Shown: positions 7,551 through 57,309, counted from the stretch's first letter. The stretch is 64,000 nucleotides of DNA from Octopus bimaculoides (GCF_001194135.2 NC_069000.1:17061543-17125542), one strand, 5' to 3'. The notes: generated by a model from the sequence alone, not told the origin. Numbers and translations: made by a program.

Positions 7551-10500
7551 ATGGAAATAGAACTCCACAAATTATCAACACTGGAAACATCTTTGAATAA
7601 AAGTAAATATCCATGTGAATATTGCCAAAAGTCTTTCTCCAGACCAAGTCACCTGACACGTCACCTCAGAGTTCACACTGGTGAAAAGCCATTTTTCTGT
7701 TTGGTTTGTGGCAAATGTTTCAAGCAGTCAAACCATTTGACCTCACATGCCAAAATCCACCACAAGCCTATAGACACCAACAACAATGCCCTCTCATTGC
7801 TTACAGTTGATCCATCATTGCCCACTTTTGACACTTCAAGTTTCTTGACTCCTGGTGACAAAAGCAACCATGAAATGTCACCCATTGAATCTCCTGCTTG
7901 TTTCACTAATGGATTATTACCTTCACATGTGAAAAGAGAACCTGGTTTAAGTTTAAGGGACGATGATTGTATTATTACAAAGGCCAACACAAACAGACAA
8001 GTCGAAAACTTGATTTTAAGTGGATCGATAGCAGCATGCCTGAAAAGATCAACACCAGCATTTCTGTCTAAACAACACTTAAACTATAAGAAAGATGTTT
8101 CTAAATTAACCAACAAAAGCCCCGTCAGTAAGGAGTTAACAACATCTTTGAAGTGTGAACTATGTATGGAAGAATTCATGAATTACAATTCCTTAAAAAT
8201 TCATTTACAAACGCACACATTTCCTCCAAAAATTCAGCACCAAAAGAGACCAGTAGTAAAAAATATGAATGTCTTCTCTTATAGGGATTATTTATCACAG
8301 AAAAGTGTTTCAGAAAATAAAGATGGACATCTGCAAATTCAGATGAAAGAGAATTTGGATGTCAGTAAAGACGTTAATAATATTTCCATTAATGTATCTG
8401 ACGACATATTAAATGATGAAATATTGCTTCTTCAATCAGATGCTGAATCTGATGATGATGATGATGATGATGTTATTATCATTAAAGCAGATCTTGATAG
8501 TGAGGCAAACCTCTCTTCTGACTCAGCCCTGGAGACAGAGAAATCAAAACCAATTAAACCAACCCTTCGTACCAAAGATCCCCAACTAGATGACATCAGA
8601 GTAACATCAAAACATAAACATCTTGACTCTATGGATCTGAATGAAAATTCCTCAACACTCCAAACTTTAAGAGAAAATAATAACTTCAAATCAGGATTTT
8701 CTTCTTCAAACTTGAGGATTCTAGAGAAGATGTTATCTGGAGAAACAGTAGACCAAAGTTATTTAAATACAGCATTATCATCATCATTGACACCACCATC
8801 ATCATCATCATCACAAACTGCTAAAAGGCAATCTTTTATACACTTTGACATTGACAAGAATCATACACTCCATGTCGGCTCAAAGCCATTTACCAGAGAC
8901 AAACTTGCAACACAGCAATGGGAAACATCACACTCGTCCACCATCAGTCCAAATAAACGACGCCAAATTCTTTCATCCCTACCCAATGATGCCACAACAA
9001 CACAACAGCTGCCACATCTTACTTCAAACAAAGTGATTTCTAGTGATGCTGTTCAACTGAACCGAACACTTTTTCCATCAACCATTCCAGAAAACCAGTC
9101 ACAGACAAGTTTCTCAAGAACCTCCAAGTTTAAGCCAGATACACTTGTGTCGCGTACTAGCTTTAATGTCATCAATAACACATCTGTCCAACAGCCAGAG
9201 AGCCGAAAGAGACTTTCAAATCAATTGATTAGTAATAATAAATCTAACAACACTCTGTCTAGAACACCACTGATGACCAGCCAGCAACATACAAGCTCCA
9301 ACTTCTTGGCCTTTAAGAATCAACATCAAAATTATCAGTCAAGAATAAAAAAGCCACATTTGAGTACTTTCGGTGTATATCAAAGCCGTAATCGATACTT
9401 ATCTGGCAATAATTCTCAGAACAGATTTCGGTGTAAATACTGTCCAAAAGCATTTTCCCGCCCCAGTCATTTATTACGACATGTCCGTGTCCACACAGGA
9501 GAGAAGCCATTCAAATGTAAATATTGTAGTAAACAGTTCCGTCAGTCAAATCACTTAACAACTCATATTAGAATTCATACTGGCATCAAACCATTCCAGC
9601 ACAGATTTCACCTCAGTCCCAGACCATTTGATTGCCAGCTGTGTGGCCAAAGCTTTTTCTTACTTAGTCATTTAAATCTGCATCTTCAATCACATGTTGC
9701 CACTTTCAGTTATCCCAATACACAATTCAGCGATGATGCTCTCCTTGTGCTTGATCCTAATGAAGATTCAATTATGATAGAGGATGAAGCCCCTTCACAC
9801 AATACCACTGTAGAGAAAGCACACCCAATACAAAACGATAGCGAACACTCTATGTTGAAAAGCCAGACACAAAACTTGCATCCCTCTGTTCTGTATATTA
9901 AAGAACTGTCTGAGGTGTCCTACAACAAAGACTCAAATAATAATGAACATGTGGAACTTTTGTCAGAAGATGAAAGCATTGAGGAAATCTCTGAAACTGT
10001 CAATACTAATGGTAAGGGTTCCAGTGTACAGGACAATCAGACATCTGTTGAGTCTAACTTTGATACAGAATTCATTACACCACACGCAAATGAGGTATGG
10101 ACCTTGAGAACAGATGATTTGGATTCTAAAACGTCTGTTTCTACTCCAAATGAATTCCATAGCCAGTTATCCGCTGAAACATATACTCCTAAAGAACTGG
10201 AATGGAAATCTAGGTCATCTTCAGATTCTACAGACAATCAGGAAGTTGCCATTGAAGTTGTTAAATGTGAGGAAGATCATTTCAGTGAACAAGTCAATCC
10301 CAACCTTTCAGAAATTCAAACTTCTGTGAAGAAAGAACAGGAAACTGTTGATGAATGCAACCCTGACACTTTATCAGTGTTTACCCCAAAACTGACATCA
10401 AGTCCTAAACCAGATGAGTGTTTCATAAAGGTTAAAGAAGAGCCCTTAGAAGAGGAAGATGTAGACAGGAACGACGTGTCATTAAATGATAAATCTCTGT

Positions 10501-11921
10501 CCACTGCCTGCAAATATACCGAAAAAGACAATATGCAGGAATTTCTGGAACAAGAACAAAGTAATTTTCTTGGAAACTGCCTCCAAAATATTAAAACAGA
10601 GGCATGTGCTTCAACAAAGACAGTGTCTAGTTATCCACTTGCCATAGAAGATGAACAAGATATTTGGAAAAAATTTACACACACTTCATCCCATGCCTTT
10701 AATGACGATACACTGAAATTAAATGAGCCTAAAAAGAATGCAAAGATGTCTACCAACCAAGAACATAGACAATCTACACAAGACAATCCCAACACAATTG
10801 CATCCTTTGATCCAGGTAAAGGGATGAAGTGTCATTATTGCAACAAACACTTTGAAAATTGGAACCACTACAGTATACATGTTAAATCTCATTATACAGA
10901 CAATCAAGTTTATCTGGACAATACCTCTCTGAGATACAACCCAAATTTTGGGATTGTATCTCAGAATTTACTTATCATTGATGATGATGATGATGATGAT
11001 CCTGCACCCAATGCCAAAGTTTTAACTCAAGAATCTCAACATATTTTAGCTTCACCAAATAGATTAAGGAGAGTAGTTTATGGAAGTAACTCAGTCTCCC
11101 CTTCATCTATGTCTAAAAAGCCAATGTTTAAATGTACATATTGTGAGAAATCTTTTTCTCGACCTAGTCATCTAACCAGACATATTCGTATCCATACTGG
11201 TGAGAAACCATTCAAGTGTAACATTTGCAATAAAAATTTCACTCAATCCAACCATTTGACATCACACTTGAAGATACATACAGAAAGGAAACTTGATGAC
11301 TATTCTAGTATTCAACAGCGATTCTCCTTGCTGAGCCAGTTTGAGACACACTTGAAGACCCGTGGATCATGGCACTCTAACCCTGTTGAAGGAAAATCCC
11401 TAGCCCTCCACAATAATAACAACAATCACAGCACTGAAAATCTAGCCAATAAAGTGATTCTTAACTCCACTACTACTTCCCCAAATGAAATCAACTCAGC
11501 CAACCAAGAATCATTGTTTACCACAAATAAACAACTGGAAACCAAACCAACACCACTCACAGATAACCATTCTTTATCAGATCCTTCCAATATCAGCTAC
11601 AAAACAGCTGAGGAGTCATTATCTGATCTGAGAGAAGAAACTTCTGAACTAACAAATTCTCCAGATTCTTCAACCGGCCAGTGCAAGACTGATATTGCTT
11701 CCTTCAATTCTGGAAATAATTTCAATACTATTTCTTCCCCTGTCTTTCCATCAATTAGTATTATGCAAAATATCTTAAAAGAGCCCCAAATCAAAGTTGA
11801 AAAAAGTAACTTTGCCAGAGATTATTCGGCAGAATGGCAAAGAGAGGATAAGACAGCTACTTTGGAGAAGCAGGTTTTATATGAAGATGATGTTAAACCA
11901 GAAATTTTGCCAAACATTTGA
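7551..11921 (+). CDS. C2H2 zinc-finger transcription factor, ~1456 aa, 9 fingers, single large coding exon
   Basis: Uninterrupted 4.4 kb ORF. Finger pairs with TGEKP linkers at 7608-7760, 9426-9578 and 11127-11279, plus singlets (CELCMEEF..HLQTH, CQLCGQSF..HLQSH, CHYCNKHF..HVKSH). First ATG at 7551 in acaATGg context; in-frame stop at 7464-7466; splice acceptor ttttatag at 7438, with alternative AGs at 7527 and 7544 that could admit an upstream coding exon. Confidence 0.92.
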   Translation: MEIELHKLSTLETSLNKSKYPCEYCQKSFSRPSHLTRHLRVHTGEKPFFCLVCGKCFKQSNHLTSHAKIHHKPIDTNNNALSLLTVDPSLPTFDTSSFLTPGDKSNHEMSPIESPACFTNGLLPSHVKREPGLSLRDDDCIITKANTNRQVENLILSGSIAACLKRSTPAFLSKQHLNYKKDVSKLTNKSPVSKELTTSLKCELCMEEFMNYNSLKIHLQTHTFPPKIQHQKRPVVKNMNVFSYRDYLSQKSVSENKDGHLQIQMKENLDVSKDVNNISINVSDDILNDEILLLQSDAESDDDDDDDVIIIKADLDSEANLSSDSALETEKSKPIKPTLRTKDPQLDDIRVTSKHKHLDSMDLNENSSTLQTLRENNNFKSGFSSSNLRILEKMLSGETVDQSYLNTALSSSLTPPSSSSSQTAKRQSFIHFDIDKNHTLHVGSKPFTRDKLATQQWETSHSSTISPNKRRQILSSLPNDATTTQQLPHLTSNKVISSDAVQLNRTLFPSTIPENQSQTSFSRTSKFKPDTLVSRTSFNVINNTSVQQPESRKRLSNQLISNNKSNNTLSRTPLMTSQQHTSSNFLAFKNQHQNYQSRIKKPHLSTFGVYQSRNRYLSGNNSQNRFRCKYCPKAFSRPSHLLRHVRVHTGEKPFKCKYCSKQFRQSNHLTTHIRIHTGIKPFQHRFHLSPRPFDCQLCGQSFFLLSHLNLHLQSHVATFSYPNTQFSDDALLVLDPNEDSIMIEDEAPSHNTTVEKAHPIQNDSEHSMLKSQTQNLHPSVLYIKELSEVSYNKDSNNNEHVELLSEDESIEEISETVNTNGKGSSVQDNQTSVESNFDTEFITPHANEVWTLRTDDLDSKTSVSTPNEFHSQLSAETYTPKELEWKSRSSSDSTDNQEVAIEVVKCEEDHFSEQVNPNLSEIQTSVKKEQETVDECNPDTLSVFTPKLTSSPKPDECFIKVKEEPLEEEDVDRNDVSLNDKSLSTACKYTEKDNMQEFLEQEQSNFLGNCLQNIKTEACASTKTVSSYPLAIEDEQDIWKKFTHTSSHAFNDDTLKLNEPKKNAKMSTNQEHRQSTQDNPNTIASFDPGKGMKCHYCNKHFENWNHYSIHVKSHYTDNQVYLDNTSLRYNPNFGIVSQNLLIIDDDDDDDPAPNAKVLTQESQHILASPNRLRRVVYGSNSVSPSSMSKKPMFKCTYCEKSFSRPSHLTRHIRIHTGEKPFKCNICNKNFTQSNHLTSHLKIHTERKLDDYSSIQQRFSLLSQFETHLKTRGSWHSNPVEGKSLALHNNNNNHSTENLANKVILNSTTTSPNEINSANQESLFTTNKQLETKPTPLTDNHSLSDPSNISYKTAEESLSDLREETSELTNSPDSSTGQCKTDIASFNSGNNFNTISSPVFPSISIMQNILKEPQIKVEKSNFARDYSAEWQREDKTATLEKQVLYEDDVKPEILPNI

Positions 11922-30390: not shown

Positions 30391-30429
30391 TGGCTTCATG
30401 CAGGCATAGCATGGATTCGATCGTCAAAT

Positions 30430-30690
30430 TTCACTGCGGTACTTACCGTTACCTAATTGAGGGACCAGAATTTAAATTCAAAGACGGGCAAACCTTCAAA
30501 GTTAAGTCCAATCTCACCTGCAACACAGAAAACCTGATCTACATAACTCCGTGCAATGATTGCCAGCATAATTACATAGGTCAAACAGGCGGATCGTTAC
30601 GCAACTGAATGGTGACCCATCGCCAACAAATCCGAGACAAAAGCACGAGGAAAATTCCTCTCAGCAGTCACATTGCAACCTGTGCAGGGA
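30430..30690 (+). mobile_element. Penelope-like element GIY-YIG endonuclease fragment
   Basis: FKVKSNLTCNTENLIYITPCNDCQHNYIGQTGGSLRN*MVTHRQQI: the PLE C..NLIY...C..C...YIGQT pattern with a stop. Confidence 0.85.
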
Positions 30691-32195
30691 CTATGAAAAC
30701 CTGCATCGATGAAACAAAGAAGTTTTTCGAACAGTAAATTCAAAGGAAAGGGTCCCAGACATTTTGGAGGCAGAAGTTAGAAATTTTATATACGAAATGA
30801 AAAACAATAAAACTACAGGTTCAGATGGGATTGAAATAGAATTGTTAAAAGTGGTTGAACCAAGTAGAGAGAAGCGAGTAGCTAAACTATATGCAAAATG
30901 CCTGCGGGAACATAAGATACCAGATGTGTGGAAAACTTCCGAACTGATCCTTCTTTATAAAAAGAGGGATGCCAGAGATCTAAAGAATTGCAGACCAATC
31001 AGTCTTCTATCACATATCTACAAGATCTTCTAAAGTATATCAAAAAGAATTGAGAGAAAGCTGTATGAGAACAGTACAGCAGAGCAGGCGGGCGTCAGGA
31101 AATCTATTGTACATTAGATCACATACACGCTATAACCAACTGGGGGAAACTGAAAGACTTACAACATACCATTATGCCCAATATTTGTAGATTTTGAAAA
31201 ACCTTTTGCTTCCGTTAAAATTGATGATATACCAAGAGCACTAAAGGAAAAGGGAATCGAAAGAGACTACGTGAAGTTATTAGAGAATGTACGCACCAAC
31301 TGCAGACCTTCAGCGACTATAAACAACAAAGCGACTAATATCAAAATTGGTAAAGGTGTCAGACAAGGGGACACCATATCACTCAAATTATTCACATCTG
31401 TATTAGAAAAGGTTTTTAAGAACTTATATTGGTCAGATGAAGGAGAAAATATAAACGGATGCATATTAAATCACCTCAGATTTACTGATGAAACTGCATT
31501 CATTTTCAGGGGCATTAAAGAATTAACAGAAATGCTCTGAGAAATAAAAGAAGAGTAAAAAATGTGGACTCAGAATTAATATTAGTAAAATGAAGACAAT
31601 CTCCAACAATTTAATAACAGCTGGAAATGTAAAAATAATAATCTGTTTAAAGGATAAAAATCAGACCAAAGAAATTGAATGATGAATACAATTGGGATTG
31701 ACAGCCTTTGGTAAATTGAATCACACCATGAGCAATAATTTGCCCATGTATCTAAAAAGAAAGGTCTTAACTAGTGTGTGCTGCCTACCATTATGTATAC
31801 ATAAGACACATGGACTACCAACAAGAGCATTGAAAATAGATTAAAATCAACACAAAGAGCCATGGAAAAGAGAAGTCTAAGGATTAACAAAATGGATAAG
31901 TGGAGAAACAACAGAATAAGAGCGGCAACAGATATTATGCGTAAGATAAAAACTCTGAAATGGTTTTTCGCGAGACGTGTTTAGAAAGGACAATAGATGG
32001 AATAGCAAATTGACAGAGTGGACAACACACCCAGAAAAAAATGGAGGGGAAAACCATGCAGAAGGTGGAATAAAGACCTTTTTAAATTCTTCGGCCTCCA
32101 AACATGGATGAGTAAAACATTGGACCGTGATCGGTGGAGAGAACATACTGAGGCATTCGTCCAGCAGTAGACTGAACATGTGCAAGGATGATCAT
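30690..32195 (+). mobile_element. 5'-truncated RTE LINE (RT domain to 3' end), pseudogenised
   Basis: KTTGSDGI...WKTSELILLYKK.D..DLKNCRPISLLSHIYKIF*, GKGVRQGDTISLKLFT, LNHLRFTDE; many stops and frameshifts. Confidence 0.9.
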
Positions 32196-32979
32196 ATATA
32201 CGTACGTGCGTACATACACAATACGTTTAAATTTTGAATAAAACGTACAAGTTACGTCATAATTATTGAGAAAGTGTATTGAGAAAAAGACATTTAGAGA
32301 CTCAACGCAGACACAAGCACACACAGGCACGCACAAACTTTAGTTTAAACAACTAGTTAGATTAGATAGATACATTCTTATTATTTTTCTAGAACATTCA
32401 GCAAATAAACTAACCATTCTATGAAGAAAGAATGATCAGTATAGTCACTTGCCTACTTGCCTGTGTGTGCATTAGTTTGTGTTGCTTTTGTCTCTAACTG
32501 GTTTTATTATTATTTGTTATAGTCTTCATCATCACGGTCAGCAAGGATGCTGCTTTCGCCGTTTTCTTTAAACATAGAGTAAAACAATTGTGAATCATTA
32601 CATCAAGATGGTGAAGATGATATCTTTATTAATACTTTTATATACCGTTCCTTGATAGGAAAAATATACTGGAGCAAGAATTTCGTGTCTGCAGTAGCTA
32701 ATATGCTAACATAGTCATCATTTTCAGGTATCGTTGTCAATAGATTCCTCATATTTTCGATTCTTCTAATGTTTTATCCTAACAACAATGCAAAGTATTT
32801 TCCTCTTTCGCTCTTCTCTCCTTCCTTCCTTCCTTCCTTCCTTTTATTCTTTCTTGCCTTTTCCCCTTTTTCTTGTAACTGTATTTCTCTTTTCTACTTC
32901 CTGTTCCGAGGTCCAACTCCTAAAACTGAATTCTTACCCAAACCCTTACACACTTACACACACACACACACCCTCCCCC

Positions 32980-45236: not shown

Positions 45237-45271
45237 TTCTTCTTCTTCTTCATCTTCTTCTTCTTCTTCTT

Positions 45272-45364
<93 letters not shown>

Positions 45365-45373
45365 TTTTTTTTT
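45237..45373. repeat. (TTC)n(TTA)n microsatellite
   Basis: Direct reading. Confidence 0.95.
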
Positions 45374-45634
45374 ACTTCTCAGAGCTTTCGGTCTTACTTG
45401 CTCAGGTCGATGTTGTGAGAACGGCCAACAACCTGTTGTCAGATGTCTCACAGGGTCTATTTCCGCAAATTATAAGCTTTGGTACTTGGATATCAACTTA
45501 TCGTGAAAGACACTCAACACTTAAGCACCAATCTCAAAATCTTAGCTGTCCCCCAATAAAGCAGGTTTTTGAGCCAGCTCTGCTCTCAAGTCAATTCCAA
45601 TTTCTCCGACATATTTCTCGAACCTGGTTGTTAA
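45374..45634 (-). mobile_element. R4/Dong-like RLE non-LTR retroelement, 3' end (a)
   Basis: Minus strand FEKYVGEIGIDLRAELAQKPALLG/TAKILRLVLKC*, then 3' UTR; (TAA)n on both sides. Confidence 0.7.
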
Positions 45635-45635
45635 A

Positions 45636-45668
<33 letters not shown>

Positions 45669-45690
45669 GATTATTATTATTATTATTATT

Positions 45691-47007
45691 GTTCAGTAGT
45701 TTTATTTTTATAACGTGCTTTCACTTCACTACCGAGCACAGCTCTGTGTGCCTTGGGTATGTGCTGTGGTTTGCTGTGNNNNNNNNNNNNNNNNNNNNNN
45801 NNNNNNNNNNNNNNNNNNNNNNNNNNNNNNNNNNNNNNNNNNNNNNNNNNNNNNNNNNNNNNNNNNNNNNNNNNNNNNNNNNNNNNNNNNNNNNNNNNNN
45901 NNNNNNNNNNNNNNNNNNNNNNNNNNNNNNNNNNNNNNNNNNNNNNNNNNNNNNNNNNNNNNNNNNNNNNNNNNNNNNNNNNNNNNNNNNNNNNNNNNNN
46001 NNNNNNNNNNNNNNNNNNNNNNNNNNNNNNNNNNNNNNNNNNNNNNNNNNNNNNNNNNNNNNNNNNNNNNNNNNNNNNNNNNNNNNNNNNNNNNNNNNNN
46101 NNNNNNNNNNNNNNNNNNNNNNNNNNNNNNNNNNNNNNNNNNNNNNNNNNNNNNNNNNNNNNNNNNNNNNNNNNNNNNNNNNNNNNNNNNNNNNNNNNNN
46201 NNNNNNNNNNNNNNNNNNNNNNNNNNNNNNNNNNNNNNNNNNNNNNNNNNNNNNNNNNNNNNNNNNNNNNNNNNNNNNNNNNNNNNNNNNNNNNNNNNNN
46301 NNNNNNNNNNNNNNNNNNNNNNNNNNNNNNNNNNNNNNNNNNNNNNNNNNNNNNNNNNNNNNNNNNNNNNNNNNNNNNNNNNNNNNNNNNNNNNNNNNNN
46401 NNNNNNNNNNNNNNNNNNNNNNNNNNNNNNNNNNNNNNNNNNNNNNNNNNNNNNNNNNNNNNNNNNNNNNNNNNNNNNNNNNNNNNNNNNNNNNNNNNNN
46501 NNNNNNNNNNNNNNGTTATGTTTCTTTTCATTATATGTTTTTGGTAATTTCTGGTGGGGAGGCTTTGGTCTTGTGCAGCAATTAAAAATCCTTCAGTCTC
46601 TGCTTTGAGTCCTGAGCTTCTCAACCATTGCTGGGATTTTTCTCTGTCTATTTCTTTTGCATGTTTAGCCCAGTAGGGGCTTTTCTTGCCATCGTTTTAT
46701 CATGGTCCGTTGTTGTTCTAGTTTTAGTTTGGATTTCATTTGTTTTATAGCTTTTGTTGTTTCTTCTTCTTCGTCTTCGTATTTGTTAGGTAGTATGATT
46801 TCTTGTTTGTATTTTTCAGCTTCCTTAAATACTGAAAACAGTTTTTTGTTTTGCTCGTGTTTTGTGGCTATTTGTATTAGTTTTCCTTGCTTCTGGAGTA
46901 GGTATTTTTGCAGTCCTACGGTGGTTATTTTCCAGCTGTATAAGACCCCTGCCACCTTCTGTGCGTTGTATATATAACCTTTGTCAGATTTTGGATGGTA
47001 TCCTGTC
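45691..47007 (-). mobile_element. R4/Dong-like RLE retroelement, 5'-truncated, partly in a gap (b)
   Basis: YHPKSD, KRWQEKPLLG, SGLKAETEGFLIAAQDQSLPTRNYQKHI; 3' UTR matches copy (e). Confidence 0.85.
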
Positions 47008-47130
47008 CATCATCATCATCATCAATCAATCACCAATCATCAATCACCATCAATCATCATTCATAAATCATCATCAATTAATCATCATCAATCATCAATC
47101 ACCATCAATCATCATCAATCACCATCAAGC
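47005..47130. repeat. Imperfect (ATC/AATC) low-complexity tract
   Basis: Direct reading. Confidence 0.85.
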
Positions 47131-47134
47131 TTAA

Positions 47135-47300
47135 CGGTATTTCGTCTGACGCTAAGTTCTAAGTTCAAATTCCGCCGAGGTCGACTTTGCCTTTCATCCT
47201 TTCGAAGTCGATAAATTAAGTACCAGTTGCATACTGGAGTCGATGTAATCGACTTAATCCCTTCTCCCAAATCTGAAGCCTTGCGCTTCCAGTAGAAAGG
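47135..47300 (+). mobile_element. tRNA-derived SINE, family C (young, 5'-truncated)
   Basis: aagttcaaattccgccgaggtcgactttgcctttcatcctttcgaagtcgataaattaagtaccag, ending in (ATT)n. Confidence 0.85.
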
Positions 47301-47367
<67 letters not shown>

Positions 47368-47368
<1 letters not shown>

Positions 47369-47651
47369 GTTTGACTTTTGCTTTGCATTTGTACAAGTTG
47401 GATCCAAGTCTCACCCAGAGACCTCAAGAGACCACAAGTTAGAAGTTCATGTAGGTGTTATGCCAAGGGTACCATATATTTGGATTTGTACATAGTGTTG
47501 TTCTACTCAATGTTTAAGAAACCATAAGAAAATTATGTGTTTGTTTTAAAATTTGAGATCACATAGACAGTATTTTACGTAGGATATGGGCAGTTTCCAT
47601 GAGCACTATTTTTTGAACTTCAGCCATTTTGGGGTTTCCTGGTATCTGAGC

Positions 47652-47652
<1 letters not shown>
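47368..47652 (-). mobile_element. R4/Dong-like RLE retroelement, 3' end (c)
   Basis: Minus strand AQIPGNPK/MAEVQKIVLMETAHILRKILSM*, with its own 3' UTR; (TAA)n on both sides. Confidence 0.75.
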
Positions 47653-47706
<54 letters not shown>

Positions 47707-47714
47707 CATTATCA

Positions 47715-48795
47715 TCTTTCAATTCTGTTTCCTTCTCTTGCTGACTGTGTTCTTGACACCTAGGGCAGAGAAACGCACGGTATACATTGGCAGGACATTA
47801 AAATAAACACACCAGATTGTTTATTTACAAAGTTATGTGATAGAGAAAAAGGGAAAGAAAGACAGAGAGAAAAGGAAAAAATTAAAAAAAAAAAACATAG
47901 AAGTAAACAAAGAAAATAAAGGGAAAAAAGGAAATAAAATTCACAACGACAATGTTCTTCTCAATACGTGAGACGTACCAGTTAAGACAATCTTTTGCAT
48001 TTCCCGCACGGATGGTAAGCCAGGAACCATTCTTAAATAAGTTTCAGTTCCTTTCTTGATCATTCCAAGCGCTCCTACAATTACTGGTATTGTAACCGTC
48101 TTGAGATACCACATCTTTTCGATTTCGATTAGTAAATCTTTACATTTTCTGAGCTTATCAAATTCTTTTGCTGAGATATTATGGTCACAGGGTACGCTCA
48201 TGTCATTCAATAAACAGACTTTATTATTTTGGTCTTTCACAACAATATCTGGTTAATTAGCTTTGATGATCCAGTCTGTACATACTGGGAAGTCTCAAAG
48301 AATAGTTACATTTTCTCCCTCAGTTACAGCCTCAAGAGCGTGCTTGTACCATTTGTCAGCAATTTTAATTTTATAATACCGCCTCATTATCCAATGTAGA
48401 TATTGTCCAACTCTGTCATGTCTTGATTTGCACTCTACAGGTGCTAAATCCTTACACCCAGAGATTAATTGGTCCACTGTTTCAATCCCAGCATTGCAGT
48501 ATCTACACCATTTTTCATTATATTGGCTTGATAGTCCCCAGTCAATAAGCTCTGATTTTGAGCGGCCAAGATAAAGCCGACATTCTCTGCTTTTAGCCCT
48601 GAGCTCCGTAGTCATTGGTGTGTGTGCTTATGGTCTACATCAGCTTGTTTGCTACGGGCCACATATTTGCCATGCAGAGGATTTTTGTCCGCCAATTGTT
48701 CACACGCATTTTGCTATTGATTTCACCTTCATTGCAACTAAAGTTGCCGCACTTCCATCATACTGTTCAACCTGGGTATTATACATAAATTCACT
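47715..48795 (-). mobile_element. R4/Dong-like RLE retroelement, 5'-truncated (d)
   Basis: CCHC knuckle CRYCNAGIETVDQLISGC..RHDRVGQYLHW, then RLE domain CLLNDMSVP.D.NI..KEFDKL..KDL.IEIEKMW..IPVIVGALG..MQKIVLTGTSHVLRRTLSL*. Confidence 0.9.
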
Positions 48796-48830
48796 TATTA
48801 TTATTATTATTATTATTATTGTTATTATTA

Positions 48831-48874
<44 letters not shown>

Positions 48875-48880
48875 ATTATT

Positions 48881-49475: not shown

Positions 49476-50339
49476 TTTAATGAATTTTAATTACCTTTTT
49501 CTGATGGTATCTGAAAAGAAACAGCAATTNNNNNNNNNNNNNNNNNNNNNNNNNNNNNNNNNNNNNNNNNNNNNNNNNNNNNNNNNNNNNNNNNNNNNNN
49601 NNNNNNNNNNNNNNNNNNNNNNNNNNNNNNNNNNNNNNNNNNNNNNNNNNNNNNNNNNNNNNNNNNNNNNNNNNNNNNNNNNNNNNNNNNNNNNNNNNNN
49701 NNNNNNNNNNNNNNNNNNNNNNNNNNNNNNNNNNNNNNNNNNNNNNNNNNNNNNNNNNNNNNNNNNNNNNNNNNNNNNNNNNNNNNNNNNNNNNNNNNNN
49801 NNNNNNNNNNNNNNNNNNNNNNNNNNNNNNNNNNNNNNNNNNNNNNNNNNNNNNNNNNNNNNNNNNNNNNNNNNNNNNNNNNNNNNNNNNNNNNNNNNNN
49901 NNNNNNNNNNNNNNNNNNNNNNNNNNNNNNNNNNNNNNNNNNNNNNNNNNNNNNNNNNNNNNNNNNNNNNNNNNNNNNNNNNNNNNNNNNNNNNNNNNNN
50001 NNNNNNNNNNNNNNNNNNNNNNNNNNNNNNNNNNNNNNNNNNNNNNNNNNNNNNNNNNNNNNNNNNNNNNNNNNNNNNNNNNNNNNNNNNNNNNNNNNNN
50101 NNNNNNNNNNNNAGATAGGTGGTAGTTATGGCAGTTGCCTGCCATAACTGTCACAACTGCCATCTCTGAAGAGCGCAAGGTTACATAATTGGGTTATTAC
50201 CTAACACTCCGTTGAATCCCAAGTGCGAAACCGATTGGTAAGATCGGCCGTAATGGAGATATAATATTGTACACTTTGATTAATATATACCCATTCTATT
50301 GACAAATATTTTTTTTCTGACTTATGGATTCTTAGATGG

Positions 50340-56065: not shown

Positions 56066-56427
56066 ATTATCTCTTTCTTTCTCACCTTCACTCCCCCCTC
56101 TCTCTCTCTCACTGGAAGGAATCGGACGCATTCAAACCGAGAGAGAGACGTGACCCACCAGGTACAAAATGATCGCGACAACTCTGTATCTCACAACTTC
56201 ACTACGGCTCCATTAGAACTTTATAAGACTTCAAAGAAGGACACTTATGTTATCAAGACAGAAAGCCAAAGCATAAACTAAATACTGTTAAACGTTTAAT
56301 CTCGCACTCTTACATCTCTCACTACACAATTTTTCGAAGAATTGGAGATAATTTATGCATATTTTACATGGTTTAATCAGGTAGCTACAAGCTAAGCCTG
56401 CAGCATCTGCAAGCATTCTGAGACAGT

Positions 56428-56593
56428 CAGGGTCGGCCATAGGGTTGCTGGCGCCCCGGTCAAGTTGAACTTTGGCGTGTATAAGCTGACGGTCGTGGAA
56501 ATTTTCTTGTCTTTGTAACGCCCAGCTTGGCGCCCCCTAGCACATGGCACCCCAGGCGACTGCCCGAGTTGCCCGTACCTTGAGCCGACCCTG
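56428..56593. mobile_element. 166-bp hAT-type MITE with 8-bp TSD
   Basis: TIRs CAGGGTCGGC / GCCGACCCTG; TSD GAGACAGT at 56420-56427 and 56594-56601. Confidence 0.92.
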
Positions 56594-56618
56594 GAGACAG
56601 TTGAGATTGATATAGTTG

Positions 56619-56900
56619 ATTATTTACAACTGATGGATATTTGTCCTCATTTTGTTTGTTGTTAACACAACGTTTCGGCTGATATACCCTCCAGCCTTCA
56701 TCAGGTGTCTTGGGGAAATTTCAAACCTGGGTTCTCATTCCTATGGTATTTTTCGAAGTTGTTGTTGTTGTTATTATTATTATTATTATTCAGGTCACTG
56801 CCTGGAATTGAACTCAGAATCTTGGGGCTAGTACCCCGCGCTCTTAACCACTACGTCATATGCCCAAGATGAGGACAAATATCCGTCAAATGTAGATAAT
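56619..56900 (-). mobile_element. tRNA-headed non-autonomous element carrying a hammerhead ribozyme, with an inverted copy of its 3' tail at the 5' end
   Basis: Head at 56865-56791 (A box TGACGTAGTGG, B box GTTCAATTC), (AAT)n(AAC)n spacer, hammerhead at 56709-56664; inverted 32-bp repeats at 56619-56650 and 56869-56900 (28/32 identical). Confidence 0.85.
56664..56709 (-). ncRNA. Minimal type I hammerhead ribozyme
   Basis: GACAC-CTGATGA-A-GGCTG-gagggtatat-CAGCC-GAAAC-GTT/GTGTT: stem I 5 bp, stem II 5 bp, palindromic ACGT in place of stem III; predicted cleavage between 56669 and 56668. Confidence 0.8.
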
Positions 56901-57004
56901 GCATTCTTAATAGGTCAAGCAACTGTGCAAGCAAAGTAGATGTGGGGAGCCCTATTTATACTAGGGACAAATTACGATCAAACTCCAGCAAAAAAAAAAT
57001 TAAA

Positions 57005-57197
57005 AAATAGTGCAATGGGTGTAAAACAACGTAGTAAACGAATATGAAAATAATGCGCGCTAGCGAATGGGGGGGGGGGAGAACTCGGAAAATTCACATC
57101 GGGAATGTTCCGAGTCTTCTTACCCCGCTCGCCAGCGTACATTTTTGTTTTTTCATATTCGTCTACTACATGTTGTTTTACACCGATTGCACTATTT
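57005..57197. repeat. ~190-bp fold-back (long imperfect inverted repeat, ~9-nt loop)
   Basis: aaatagtgcaat.ggtgtaaaacaac..gtagta.acgaatatgaaaa...actcggaa.att pairs with the right arm around the loop at ~57095-57103. Confidence 0.85.
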
Positions 57198-57309
57198 ATT
57201 AATATTCTTCTTCTTTTTTTGCTCGTGTCAAACACTGGAGTTTGACCCAAATTACAAGTTCATAAGAGCTTGTGGGGGCACTTCTATGATGAGAAAAAAT
57301 AACGAAACT

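What the first reader, a model, noticed from the sequence alone, without database searches (positions are those of the whole stretch)
56619..56900. tRNA-headed SINE-like element carrying a complete minimal hammerhead ribozyme, with Penelope-style inverted tail
Seen: on the minus strand, a Pol III tRNA head (A box TGACGTAGTGG, B box GTTCAATTC), an (AAT)n(AAC)n spacer, then GACAC-CUGAUGA-A-GGCUG(10-nt loop)CAGCC-GAAAC-GUU^GUGUU and a ~45-nt tail. An inverted copy of that tail (28/32 identical) sits directly against the 5' end. Established: minimal hammerheads whose stem III is replaced by a palindrome and that cleave as dimers occur in the terminal repeats of Penelope-like elements (PLEs); short inverted 5' duplications are a hallmark of PLE insertion; schistosome SM-alpha is a precedent for tRNA-SINE plus hammerhead. 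Inference: a Pol III-driven, self-cleaving non-autonomous element mobilised by PLE RT/GIY-YIG rather than by a LINE, possibly with circular RNA intermediates as in retrozymes. Three PLE fragments lie in the same window. I cannot tell from here whether this family is already catalogued.
Basis: partly seen in the sequence, partly recalled or inferred. Interest (0 to 1): 0.9.

Follow-up and report, generated by a model that had tools for sequence, protein, structure and literature searches.

The report
tRNA-headed octopus retroposon with Penelope-type hammerhead
A 282-base mobile-element copy in the Octopus bimaculoides genome joins a tRNA-like Pol III promoter to a minimal hammerhead-ribozyme motif of the kind carried by Penelope-like retrotransposons, and it sits in a Penelope-style inverted-end arrangement, which suggests a short parasite of Penelope elements rather than of LINEs, although only this one copy could be examined.

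Summary
On the minus strand of 56619-56900 (Octopus bimaculoides, chr CM046620.1) there are, in order:
- a 36-nt inverted copy of the element's own 3' end (31/36 identical);
- a tRNA-like head that starts exactly where that copy ends, with A and B boxes 33 nt apart;
- an (AAT)n(CAA)n run and a 49-nt spacer;
- a complete minimal type I hammerhead;
- a 45-nt tail.

The hammerhead meets every published feature of Penelope-like-element (PLE) minimal hammerheads. The same core and helix II occur about 255 nt downstream of the endonuclease ORF of a degraded PLE in an unrelated metagenome contig. Rfam's hammerhead models miss both, so that negative result is uninformative.

The best reading is a PLE-mobilised, Pol III-headed non-autonomous retroposon copy, roughly 20 My old.

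Not shown:
- that it belongs to a repeat family; every route to further octopus copies failed;
- that it cleaves;
- that an octopus PLE shares its 3' end.

No target-site duplication was found. There is no tandem arrangement, so it is not a retrozyme. Only one PLE fragment was verified in the window, not three.

I rate it a new variant of a known kind (SMalpha, non-autonomous PLE derivatives), of moderate interest, resting on a single locus.

The parts
56865..56900 (-). Inverted copy of the element's 3'-terminal 36 nt. Its inner end abuts (overlaps by 1 nt) the predicted +1 of the tRNA-like head.
   Evidence: the repeat finder I2, 86% complementary. 31/36 identical, JC distance 0.154. Score 23.5 against a shuffle maximum of 11.5.
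56791..56865 (-). tRNA-like Pol III head. A box TGACGTAGTGG at 56858-56848, B box AGTTCAATTCC at 56814-56804, 33-nt gap. Predicted +1 at 56865, 7 nt before the A box.
   Evidence: A/B scan finds it together with five other SINE heads of the window, all with a 33-nt gap; 0.1 expected by chance. 44/69 identical to the head of the SINE at 13987-13919, 0 of 20000 shuffles. Not called as a tRNA.
56759..56790 (-). Internal microsatellite (AAT)n(CAA)n linking the head to the 3' module.
   Evidence: Sequence. Its only other matches in the window are (AAT)n arrays.
56710..56758 (-). Unique 49-nt spacer upstream of the hammerhead, presumed part of the PLE-derived 3' module.
   Evidence: Sequence. No other match in the window.
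56664..56709 (-). Minimal type I hammerhead. Helix I 56709-56705 with 56668-56664. CUGAUGA 56704-56698. Extra A 56697. Helix II 56696-56691 with 56682-56677, loop 56690-56683. GAAA 56676-56673. Palindrome ACGU 56673-56670. U17 at 56669. Predicted cut between 56669 and 56668.
   Evidence: Descriptor scan and shuffles. The centroid fold shows helices I and II. Features match PMC4209133. Identical core and helix II in L007-L012. Helix I covaries across the three lineages.
56619..56663 (-). 45-nt 3' tail after the hammerhead. Its last 36 nt (56654-56619) form the direct arm of the inverted repeat and mark the 3' end of the unit.

Best explanation
This is one old copy of a short, non-coding, SINE-like retroposon of about 247 nt from +1 to its 3' end.

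Composition:
- The 5' module is a degenerate tRNA-derived Pol III promoter of the kind used by other octopus SINEs.
- The 3' module (spacer, minimal hammerhead, 45-nt tail) derives from the 3'/pseudo-LTR region of a canonical hammerhead-bearing Penelope-like element.

Proposed mechanism (inferred, not shown):
1. Pol III starts at the head's +1 and reads through the element, which contains no TTTT terminator.
2. The PLE-derived 3' module is recognised in trans by a PLE reverse transcriptase / GIY-YIG endonuclease.
3. Target-primed reverse transcription reaches the RNA's 5' end.
4. The PLE-specific resolution step leaves a severely 5'-truncated inverted second copy (the last 36 nt) head-to-head with the full copy.

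Role of the hammerhead (inferred): it came along as part of the PLE recognition or processing module. As a single unit with only an ACGU helix III it should be essentially inactive. It could cut after U17 only by pairing with a second copy, in trans or in tandem.
For: Shown:
- Anatomy and coordinates.
- The A/B boxes have tRNA spacing and the head is homologous to another octopus SINE head.
- The hammerhead has the extra nucleotide between A9 and 10.1, the G10.1-C11.1 pair, the palindromic 15.2-16.2 pair, a 5-bp helix I and a 6-bp helix II. These are the hallmarks listed for PLE min-HHRs.
- CUGAUGA-A-GGCUG...CAGCC-GAAACGUU recurs in three independent loci in JGI metagenomes. One lies about 255 nt downstream of the GIY-YIG ORF of a degraded RT+EN PLE. 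Helix I there pairs with different sequences.
- The inverted arm ends exactly at the head's predicted +1. This is expected if the unit is a full-length Pol III transcript copied to its 5' end and then given the inverted 5'-truncated partner typical of PLE insertions.
- There is no TTTT in the 247 nt.
- Octopus genomes carry many PLE families, some recently active, and hundreds of unclassified SINE families.
Against: - Only one copy was seen. No second copy is in the 64-kb window, and no further octopus DNA could be reached.
- No target-site duplication.
- No octopus PLE with a similar 3' end was found.
- The closest relatives of the one PLE fragment in the window (contigs of unidentified source) show no hammerhead downstream of the endonuclease ORF.
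- No Rfam hammerhead hit, although the PLE-linked control is missed too.
- The head does not fold as a tRNA.
- The modelled double-hammerhead dimer is not more stable than two monomers (-24.3 against -26.0 kcal/mol).
- A microsatellite sits at the head/3'-module junction, so two events cannot be excluded.
Confidence: 0.5

Rival explanations
1. One-off chimeric retrocopy. During PLE-mediated reverse transcription of a 5'-truncated PLE RNA (or a solo pLTR transcript), the enzyme switched template onto a small tRNA-like Pol III RNA. The result is a single head-plus-PLE-tail pseudogene that never propagated as a family.
For: - Single copy in the window.
- No related ORF-derived sequence in the protein collections.
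- The modules join at a microsatellite.
- The PLE-type inverted end is equally expected under this reading.
Against: - A template switch would normally land on the 3' end of the second RNA. That requires an otherwise unknown 75-nt head-only RNA with an (AAT)n(CAA)n tail.
- The abundant octopus SINEs in the window have long bodies and no such tails.
- The absence of copies was not actually tested genome-wide.
Confidence: 0.2
2. Juxtaposition of independent insertions. A PLE-derived fragment (hammerhead plus tail, with its inverted partner) and an unrelated short tRNA-SINE or SINE fragment with a microsatellite tail lie nested by chance. PLEs prefer microsatellite targets.
For: - PLEs show a microsatellite insertion bias.
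- (AAT)n arrays are very common in this region.
- The 18 nt after the tail (CAACTATATCAATCTCAA) look like a decayed CAA repeat.
- The locus is TE-dense, with MITE-like palindromes on both sides.
Against: - If the PLE fragment had inserted into the microsatellite, its inverted partner should abut the spacer at about 56758. It abuts the +1 of the head 107 nt further upstream.
- A SINE landing exactly at the inverted/direct junction is an extra coincidence.
- There is no target-site duplication around the head plus microsatellite.
Confidence: 0.13
3. An ordinary LINE-mobilised tRNA-SINE whose body contains a hammerhead-like motif by chance, with the terminal inverted repeat unrelated to PLEs.
For: - A relaxed descriptor gives about 0.01-0.02 chance motifs per 64 kb, which is hundreds per 2.7-Gb genome.
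- No Rfam hit.
- A second, weak descriptor hit at 50162-50244 does not fold as a hammerhead, which shows that false positives occur.
Against: - The motif carries the bulged nucleotide, the G10.1-C11.1 pair, the ACGU palindrome and a helix II identical to PLE-linked hammerheads elsewhere.
- It lies within a 247-nt unit that also has a PLE-type inverted 3'-end copy.
- L1-type twin priming inverts upstream sequence and does not duplicate the 3' end (established knowledge).
- The tail has no hairpin or poly(A) like the other octopus SINE ends.
Confidence: 0.08
4. A MITE-like DNA transposon with 36-bp imperfect terminal inverted repeats that happens to enclose tRNA-like and hammerhead-like sequence.
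For: - Terminal inverted repeats bound the unit exactly.
- MITE-like palindromic elements flank it on both sides.
Against: - No target-site duplication of any length.
- The inner end of one arm coincides with a Pol III +1.
- The interior has retroposon-type modules.
- Two independent functional-looking motifs would both have to be coincidences.
Confidence: 0.04

Closest known systems
Minimal type I hammerheads of Penelope-like elements (Cervera & de la Pena 2014, PMC4209133; Lunse, Weinberg & Breaker 2017)
   Same: - Core CUGAUGA...GAAA.
- Unpaired nucleotide between A9 and G10.1.
- G10.1-C11.1 pair.
- Helix III reduced to A15.1-U16.1 plus a palindromic C15.2-G16.2.
- Short helix I (5 bp) and longer helix II (6 bp).
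- Expected to act only as a dimer.
- Identical core and helix II found here in a PLE 3' region (L009/L010).
   Different: - It sits in a 247-nt non-coding unit with a Pol III head, not in the pseudo-LTR of an RT/EN-coding element.
- One motif only, with no second copy in tandem or nearby on either strand.
SMalpha SINE-like elements of Schistosoma mansoni (Ferbeyre et al. 1998, as cited in PMC8490949)
   Same: A short, non-coding, SINE-like retroposon that carries a type I hammerhead.
   Different: - From my own knowledge, the SMalpha hammerhead is a canonical, highly active type I motif with loop-loop contacts and a real helix III, and SMalpha is very abundant and often tandem.
- Here the motif is the minimal PLE type, and copy number is unknown.
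- No sequence comparison was made.
Metazoan non-LTR retrozymes (Cervera & de la Pena 2020, PMC7229834; Li, Clavereau & Pollet 2026 preprint, 10.64898/2026.07.22.740005)
   Same: Non-autonomous, non-coding, hammerhead-bearing elements proposed to be derivatives and parasites of PLEs.
   Different: - Retrozymes are tandem 170-400-nt repeats with canonical type I hammerheads, expressed as circular RNAs, and no tRNA head or Pol III promoter is reported for them.
- This element is solitary, has a minimal hammerhead and has a tRNA-like head.
Classical tRNA-derived SINEs (SINE2), including the octopus SINEs in this window
   Same: - 5' head with A and B boxes 33 nt apart.
- The head is homologous to another octopus SINE head.
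- Short and non-coding, with no internal TTTT.
   Different: - The 3' module is not LINE-like. There is no terminal hairpin of the kind seen in the abundant octopus SINE, no poly(A) and no target-site duplication.
- It carries a PLE-type hammerhead and an inverted 3'-end duplication.
Short non-autonomous PLE derivatives (Chlamys MRC1 in Chlamydomonas, PMC8557442; short non-autonomous Penelope elements in Heliconius, PMC6685494)
   Same: Non-coding elements that share 3' ends with autonomous PLEs and form PLE-type terminal arrangements.
   Different: None of these is reported to have a tRNA-derived Pol III head, and Chlamys elements lack canonical hammerheads.

Membership tests
PLE-type minimal hammerhead ribozyme | Conserved core CUGANGA ... 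GAAA with H17 (not G) at the cleavage site | tested here: met
   CUGAUGA 56704-56698, GAAA 56676-56673, U17 at 56669.
PLE-type minimal hammerhead ribozyme | Helix I of 4-5 bp and a longer helix II, flanking the core in type I order | tested here: met
   Helix I is 5 bp (GACAC/GUGUU) and helix II is 6 bp (GGCUGG/UCAGCC).
PLE-type minimal hammerhead ribozyme | Unpaired nucleotide between A9 and 10.1, and a G10.1-C11.1 pair | tested here: met
   A at 56697; G at 56696 pairs with C at 56677. Criteria from PMC4209133.
PLE-type minimal hammerhead ribozyme | Helix III reduced to 15.1-16.1 plus a palindromic 15.2-16.2, so that two copies can pair | tested here: met
   ACGU at 56673-56670. A double-hammerhead pairing can be drawn, at -24.3 kcal/mol.
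PLE-type minimal hammerhead ribozyme | Covariation that preserves the helices among family members in the same genome | not testable with these tools
   No other octopus copy could be retrieved. Across three unrelated lineages, helix I keeps pairing with changes on both sides at 3 of 5 pairs. Helix II was fixed by the search pattern.
PLE-type minimal hammerhead ribozyme | Location in the pseudo-LTR / 3' region of a PLE | tested here: inconclusive
   No RT/EN lies next to it. The same core is in the 3' region of the PLE in L009. The octopus partner is not identified.
PLE-type minimal hammerhead ribozyme | Self-cleavage, as a dimer | not testable with these tools
   Needs in vitro transcription of monomer and dimer constructs.
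Rfam hammerhead families | Match to a curated covariance model | tested here: not met
   No hit at the gathering score, nor at E<=10 on 900 nt or 91 nt. The PLE-linked hammerhead of L009 is also missed, so these models do not cover minimal variants.
tRNA-derived SINE (SINE2) | Internal Pol III promoter: A and B boxes at the 5' end with tRNA-like spacing | tested here: met
   A box with 1 mismatch, B box with 2 mismatches, 33-nt gap; 0.1 expected per window.
tRNA-derived SINE (SINE2) | Head recognisably derived from a tRNA | tested here: inconclusive
   ARAGORN and the Rfam tRNA model find nothing. The head is homologous to another octopus tRNA-SINE head.
tRNA-derived SINE (SINE2) | Dispersed multi-copy family | not testable with these tools
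   One copy in 64 kb. No access to the rest of the genome. Protein-word, metagenome, GTDB and viral scans were all empty for this family.
tRNA-derived SINE (SINE2) | 3' end shared with an autonomous partner retrotransposon | not testable with these tools
   No octopus PLE or LINE 3' end similar to 56758-56619 in the window or in the fetched loci.
tRNA-derived SINE (SINE2) | Target-site duplication | tested here: not met
   The best direct match between the 40-nt flanks is 4 nt, below the shuffle mean. The age of the copy and neighbouring MITE-like insertions may have erased it.
PLE-type insertion | Inverted 5'-truncated copy adjacent to the 5' end of the direct copy | tested here: met
   36-nt inverted copy of the 3' end abutting +1 of the head. 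Criterion from PMC8557442.
PLE-type insertion | Partial tandem copy forming a pseudo-LTR | tested here: not met
   No direct repeat of the unit within 1.5 kb, and no tandem array.
Non-LTR retrozyme | Tandem 170-400-nt repeats, each with a canonical type I hammerhead | tested here: not met
   Single unit, single minimal hammerhead.
MITE / TIR DNA transposon | Terminal inverted repeats plus a fixed-length target-site duplication | tested here: not met
   Inverted repeats are present, but there is no target-site duplication.

The most novel reading that the evidence does not exclude
This copy represents a genuine, propagating family of Pol III-transcribed, tRNA-headed SINEs that parasitise Penelope-like elements and not LINEs. 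The minimal hammerhead-containing 3' module would act as the handle recognised by the PLE reverse transcriptase/GIY-YIG machinery. That would be a SINE-PLE partnership, a class not found in the SINE literature I could search. It would also recast SMalpha-type elements and retrozymes as members of one continuum of PLE parasites.
Probability: 0.4. Interest if true: 0.75.

Novelty: new variant of a known kind. Interest (0 to 1): 0.55.

Why it matters
SINEs are defined as parasites of LINEs. PLEs are a separate retroelement class with a poorly understood integration mechanism, and the role of their hammerheads is unknown.

A tRNA-promoter SINE that borrows a PLE 3' end would do three things:
- Extend the SINE concept to a third class of autonomous partner.
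- Give a small, easily engineered substrate for dissecting what PLE RT/EN recognises, and whether the hammerhead is a ribozyme or a binding handle.
- Help to classify some of the hundreds of 'unclassified SINE' families reported in octopus genomes.

If it is a one-off chimera, it is only a curiosity that illustrates how such families could be born.

Tried and rejected
1. Rfam at the gathering score and at E<=10 gave no hammerhead and no tRNA. The negative result is uninformative for minimal hammerheads, because the PLE-linked motif in L009 is missed too.
2. A search for a second copy in the window found only microsatellite matches and a B-box match to another SINE.
3. I tried to reach other octopus copies through spurious ORFs. 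Frame translations of the element gave no word-sharing protein in 5.8 billion clusters. HMMER against 1.84 billion representatives returned only a poly-Leu repeat protein, which is an artefact.
4. Exact look-ups of window ORFs, to obtain the same or other loci, found nothing on record.
5. Pattern scans of GTDB genomes and IMG/VR with hammerhead, tail and head patterns returned nothing. The metagenome scan found the same hammerhead core in other animals, but no octopus copies.
6. The PLE fragment in the window (30.42-30.69 kb) and its homologues L002-L006 show no hammerhead downstream and no similarity to the element.
7. A target-site duplication search found none.
8. A second hammerhead-like hit at 50162-50244 was rejected as probably chance. 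It has no Rfam hit and its minimum-energy fold is not a hammerhead.
9. The MITE reading and the L1-type twin-priming reading were considered and rejected; the reasons are given under the rival explanations.

Full report
**Source.** The 1456-aa zinc-finger ORF at 7551-11921 is encoded on chromosome CM046620.1 of assembly GCA_001194135.2. By my own knowledge that accession is Octopus bimaculoides. The window is 35% G+C with 3.7 kb of gaps.

**Observation.** Read on the minus strand, the unit consists of:
- 56900-56865: an inverted copy of the element's last 36 nt.
- 56865-56791: a tRNA-like head.
- 56790-56759: (AAT)n(CAA)n.
- 56758-56710: a unique spacer.
- 56709-56664: GACAC-CUGAUGA-A-GGCUGG-(AGGGUAUA)-UCAGCC-GAAA-CG-U-U^GUGUU.
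- 56663-56619: a 45-nt tail, whose last 36 nt are the direct arm of the inverted repeat.

The arms are 31/36 identical. They score far above 500 shuffles (23.5 against a maximum of 11.5).

A hammerhead descriptor written for this check recovers the motif with a bulge after A9, a 6-bp helix II, a CG insert and a 5-bp helix I. Markov shuffles of the window give 0.01-0.02 such motifs per 64 kb. That is rare per window, but it means hundreds by chance in a 2.7-Gb genome. The motif alone therefore proves nothing, and the context matters.

**Head.**
- A scan for A box (at most 1 mismatch) plus B box (at most 2 mismatches) finds six pairs in the window, against 0.1 expected. All six have a 33-nt gap.
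- Four belong to an abundant octopus SINE, one to a related SINE at 13.9 kb, and one is this element.
- Its head is 44/69 identical, ungapped, to the 13.9-kb SINE head (0 of 20000 shuffles).
- It is too degenerate to be called a tRNA by ARAGORN or Rfam. No Rfam family, tRNA included, reaches its gathering score anywhere in the window, so the other SINE heads are not called either.
- Counting back 7 nt from the A box puts +1 at 56865, which is exactly the inner end of the inverted arm.
- The 247-nt unit contains no TTTT. It could therefore be transcribed through by Pol III.

**Hammerhead type.** Cervera & de la Pena (PMC4209133) list features of PLE minimal hammerheads that were not imposed by their search:
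- a G10.1-C11.1 pair;
- palindromic 15.2-16.2;
- a short helix I of 4-5 bp;
- a long helix II.

All of these are present here.

One scan of JGI metagenome contigs with CTGATGAAGGCTG-N6-14-CAGCCGAAACGTT found six contigs, which represent three loci:
- In L009/L010 the motif lies about 255 nt downstream of an ORF ending in a GIY-YIG motif. That ORF is preceded by RT motifs (RPIVS, FDVVSLFTSIP, GTAMGSPVS, YVDD; RVT_1 at 25 bits, E = 1.7e-5). This is a degraded canonical PLE.
- In the two loci represented by L007/L008 and L011/L012, a roughly 410-nt element ends 14 nt after the cleavage site.

Helix I was not part of the search pattern. It pairs in all three lineages with different sequences (GACAC/GUGUU, UCCC/GGGA, GCC/GGC).

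Rfam finds no hammerhead in the octopus motif. It finds none in the PLE-linked L009 motif either. The Rfam negative therefore says only that minimal variants are outside those models.

**Insertion architecture.**
- Craig et al. (PMC8557442) describe PLE insertions as often carrying an inverted 5'-truncated copy immediately adjacent to the 5' end, a 30-40-bp terminal 'tail', and a bias for microsatellite targets.
- Here the inverted partner consists only of the last 36 nt. It sits head-to-head against the head's +1.
- This is the strongest argument that head-to-tail is one RNA-derived unit integrated by PLE-type machinery.
- If only the hammerhead module had inserted into the microsatellite, the inverted partner should lie at about 56758, not 107 nt upstream.
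- From established knowledge, L1-type twin priming inverts upstream sequence rather than duplicating the 3' end.
- There is no target-site duplication and no tandem partial copy.
- If the arms were identical at birth, their JC distance of 0.154 (0.077 per arm) corresponds to roughly 20 My on the scale used for O. vulgaris repeats (JC 0.065 at about 18 My and 0.09 at about 25 My; PMC13282606).
- MITE-like palindromes flank the unit on both sides. They may have disturbed the original target.

**What could not be done.** The decisive test is whether this is a family, and whether its consensus keeps the hammerhead. That test needs the rest of the octopus genome, which these tools do not expose.
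- Translations of all frames found no related predicted protein.
- Exact-ORF look-ups failed.
- GTDB and viral scans were empty.
- The only PLE fragment I could verify in the window is a GIY-YIG piece at 30.42-30.69 kb, followed by a 5'-truncated LINE RT.
- Its nearest relatives, on Logan and TARA contigs, show no hammerhead downstream.

**Mechanism.** I propose a Pol III transcript from +1 through the tail. The hammerhead-containing 3' module is recognised in trans by a PLE RT/EN. Target-primed reverse transcription then runs to the RNA 5' end, and PLE-type resolution leaves the inverted stub.
- Shown: the anatomy.
- Inferred: transcription, the partner, and the order of events.
- The hammerhead as a monomer has only an ACGU helix III.
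- A double-hammerhead with a second copy can be drawn at -24.3 kcal/mol, against -26.0 for two monomers.
- Published PLE min-HHRs cut weakly, and only as dimers.
- In a solitary SINE the motif is more plausibly a recognition or processing relic than an active ribozyme. Cleavage would detach the 50-nt 3' end.
- Nothing here supports circular intermediates.

**Comparison and novelty.**
- Hammerhead-bearing SINE-like elements (SMalpha) and non-autonomous PLE derivatives are all known. The derivatives include retrozymes, Chlamys MRC1 and short Penelope elements in Heliconius.
- None of the papers I could search describes a tRNA-headed SINE with a minimal PLE hammerhead, or a SINE-PLE partnership.
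- Whether this family is already in Repbase or Dfam is unknown.
- I rate it a new variant of a known kind. Interest is 0.55, held down because the evidence is one degraded locus.

Noticed in passing
window 50162-50244 (+): A second hit of the relaxed hammerhead descriptor (AUCU-CUGAAGA-GCGC...45-nt insert...GUGC-GAAA-CC-GAUU-GG-UA^AGAU), directly after an assembly gap. There is no Rfam hammerhead hit and its minimum-energy fold is not a hammerhead. Probably chance, but two descriptor hits against 0.02 expected per window is odd.
   Followed up: partly
window 56970-57253 and about 56420-56600: Two MITE-like palindromic elements flank the unit. The first has arms 56990-57030/57172-57212 (88%) and 57031-57050/57150-57169 (95%), and gives weak plant-miRNA-precursor Rfam hits. 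The second is G+C-rich, with ends CTGTCTCCAGGGTCGGC.../...GCCGACCCTGACTGTCTCAG.
   Followed up: no
window 4151, 12728, 44623 (+); 20297, 13987 (-): At least four copies of an abundant 330-370-nt tRNA-SINE (A box TGGCCCAGTGG, B box GTTTCGATTCC; 3' end with a CGTCG...CGACG hairpin; visible target-site duplications), plus a related SINE with a different head that shares the same 3' body.
   Followed up: partly
window 30420-30690 (+), then 30700-32300 (+): A PLE-type GIY-YIG endonuclease fragment (LIYITPCNDCQHNYIGQTGGSLRN) starts right after a (TA)n(TG)n microsatellite and is followed by a 5'-truncated RTE-like LINE reverse transcriptase. Homologues at 77% nucleotide identity occur on Logan contigs from SRR1186938x-9x runs.
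   Followed up: partly
window 45237-48880: Five long (AAT)n/(ATT)n arrays and an (AAG)n array lie within 4 kb, interleaved with a roughly 260-nt unique segment. This may be a microsatellite-bounded repeat.
   Followed up: no
L007/L008 and L011/L012 (JGI metagenome contigs Ga0181466, Ga0115856): A roughly 410-nt non-coding element, present at two independent loci (90% identical), ends 14 nt after a PLE-type minimal hammerhead. It may be a non-autonomous PLE derivative in an unidentified animal. No A/B boxes were detected.
   Followed up: partly
window 7551-11921 (+): A single-exon 1456-aa protein with several C2H2 zinc-finger clusters separated by long low-complexity regions, called as a gene in the public assembly.
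   Followed up: no
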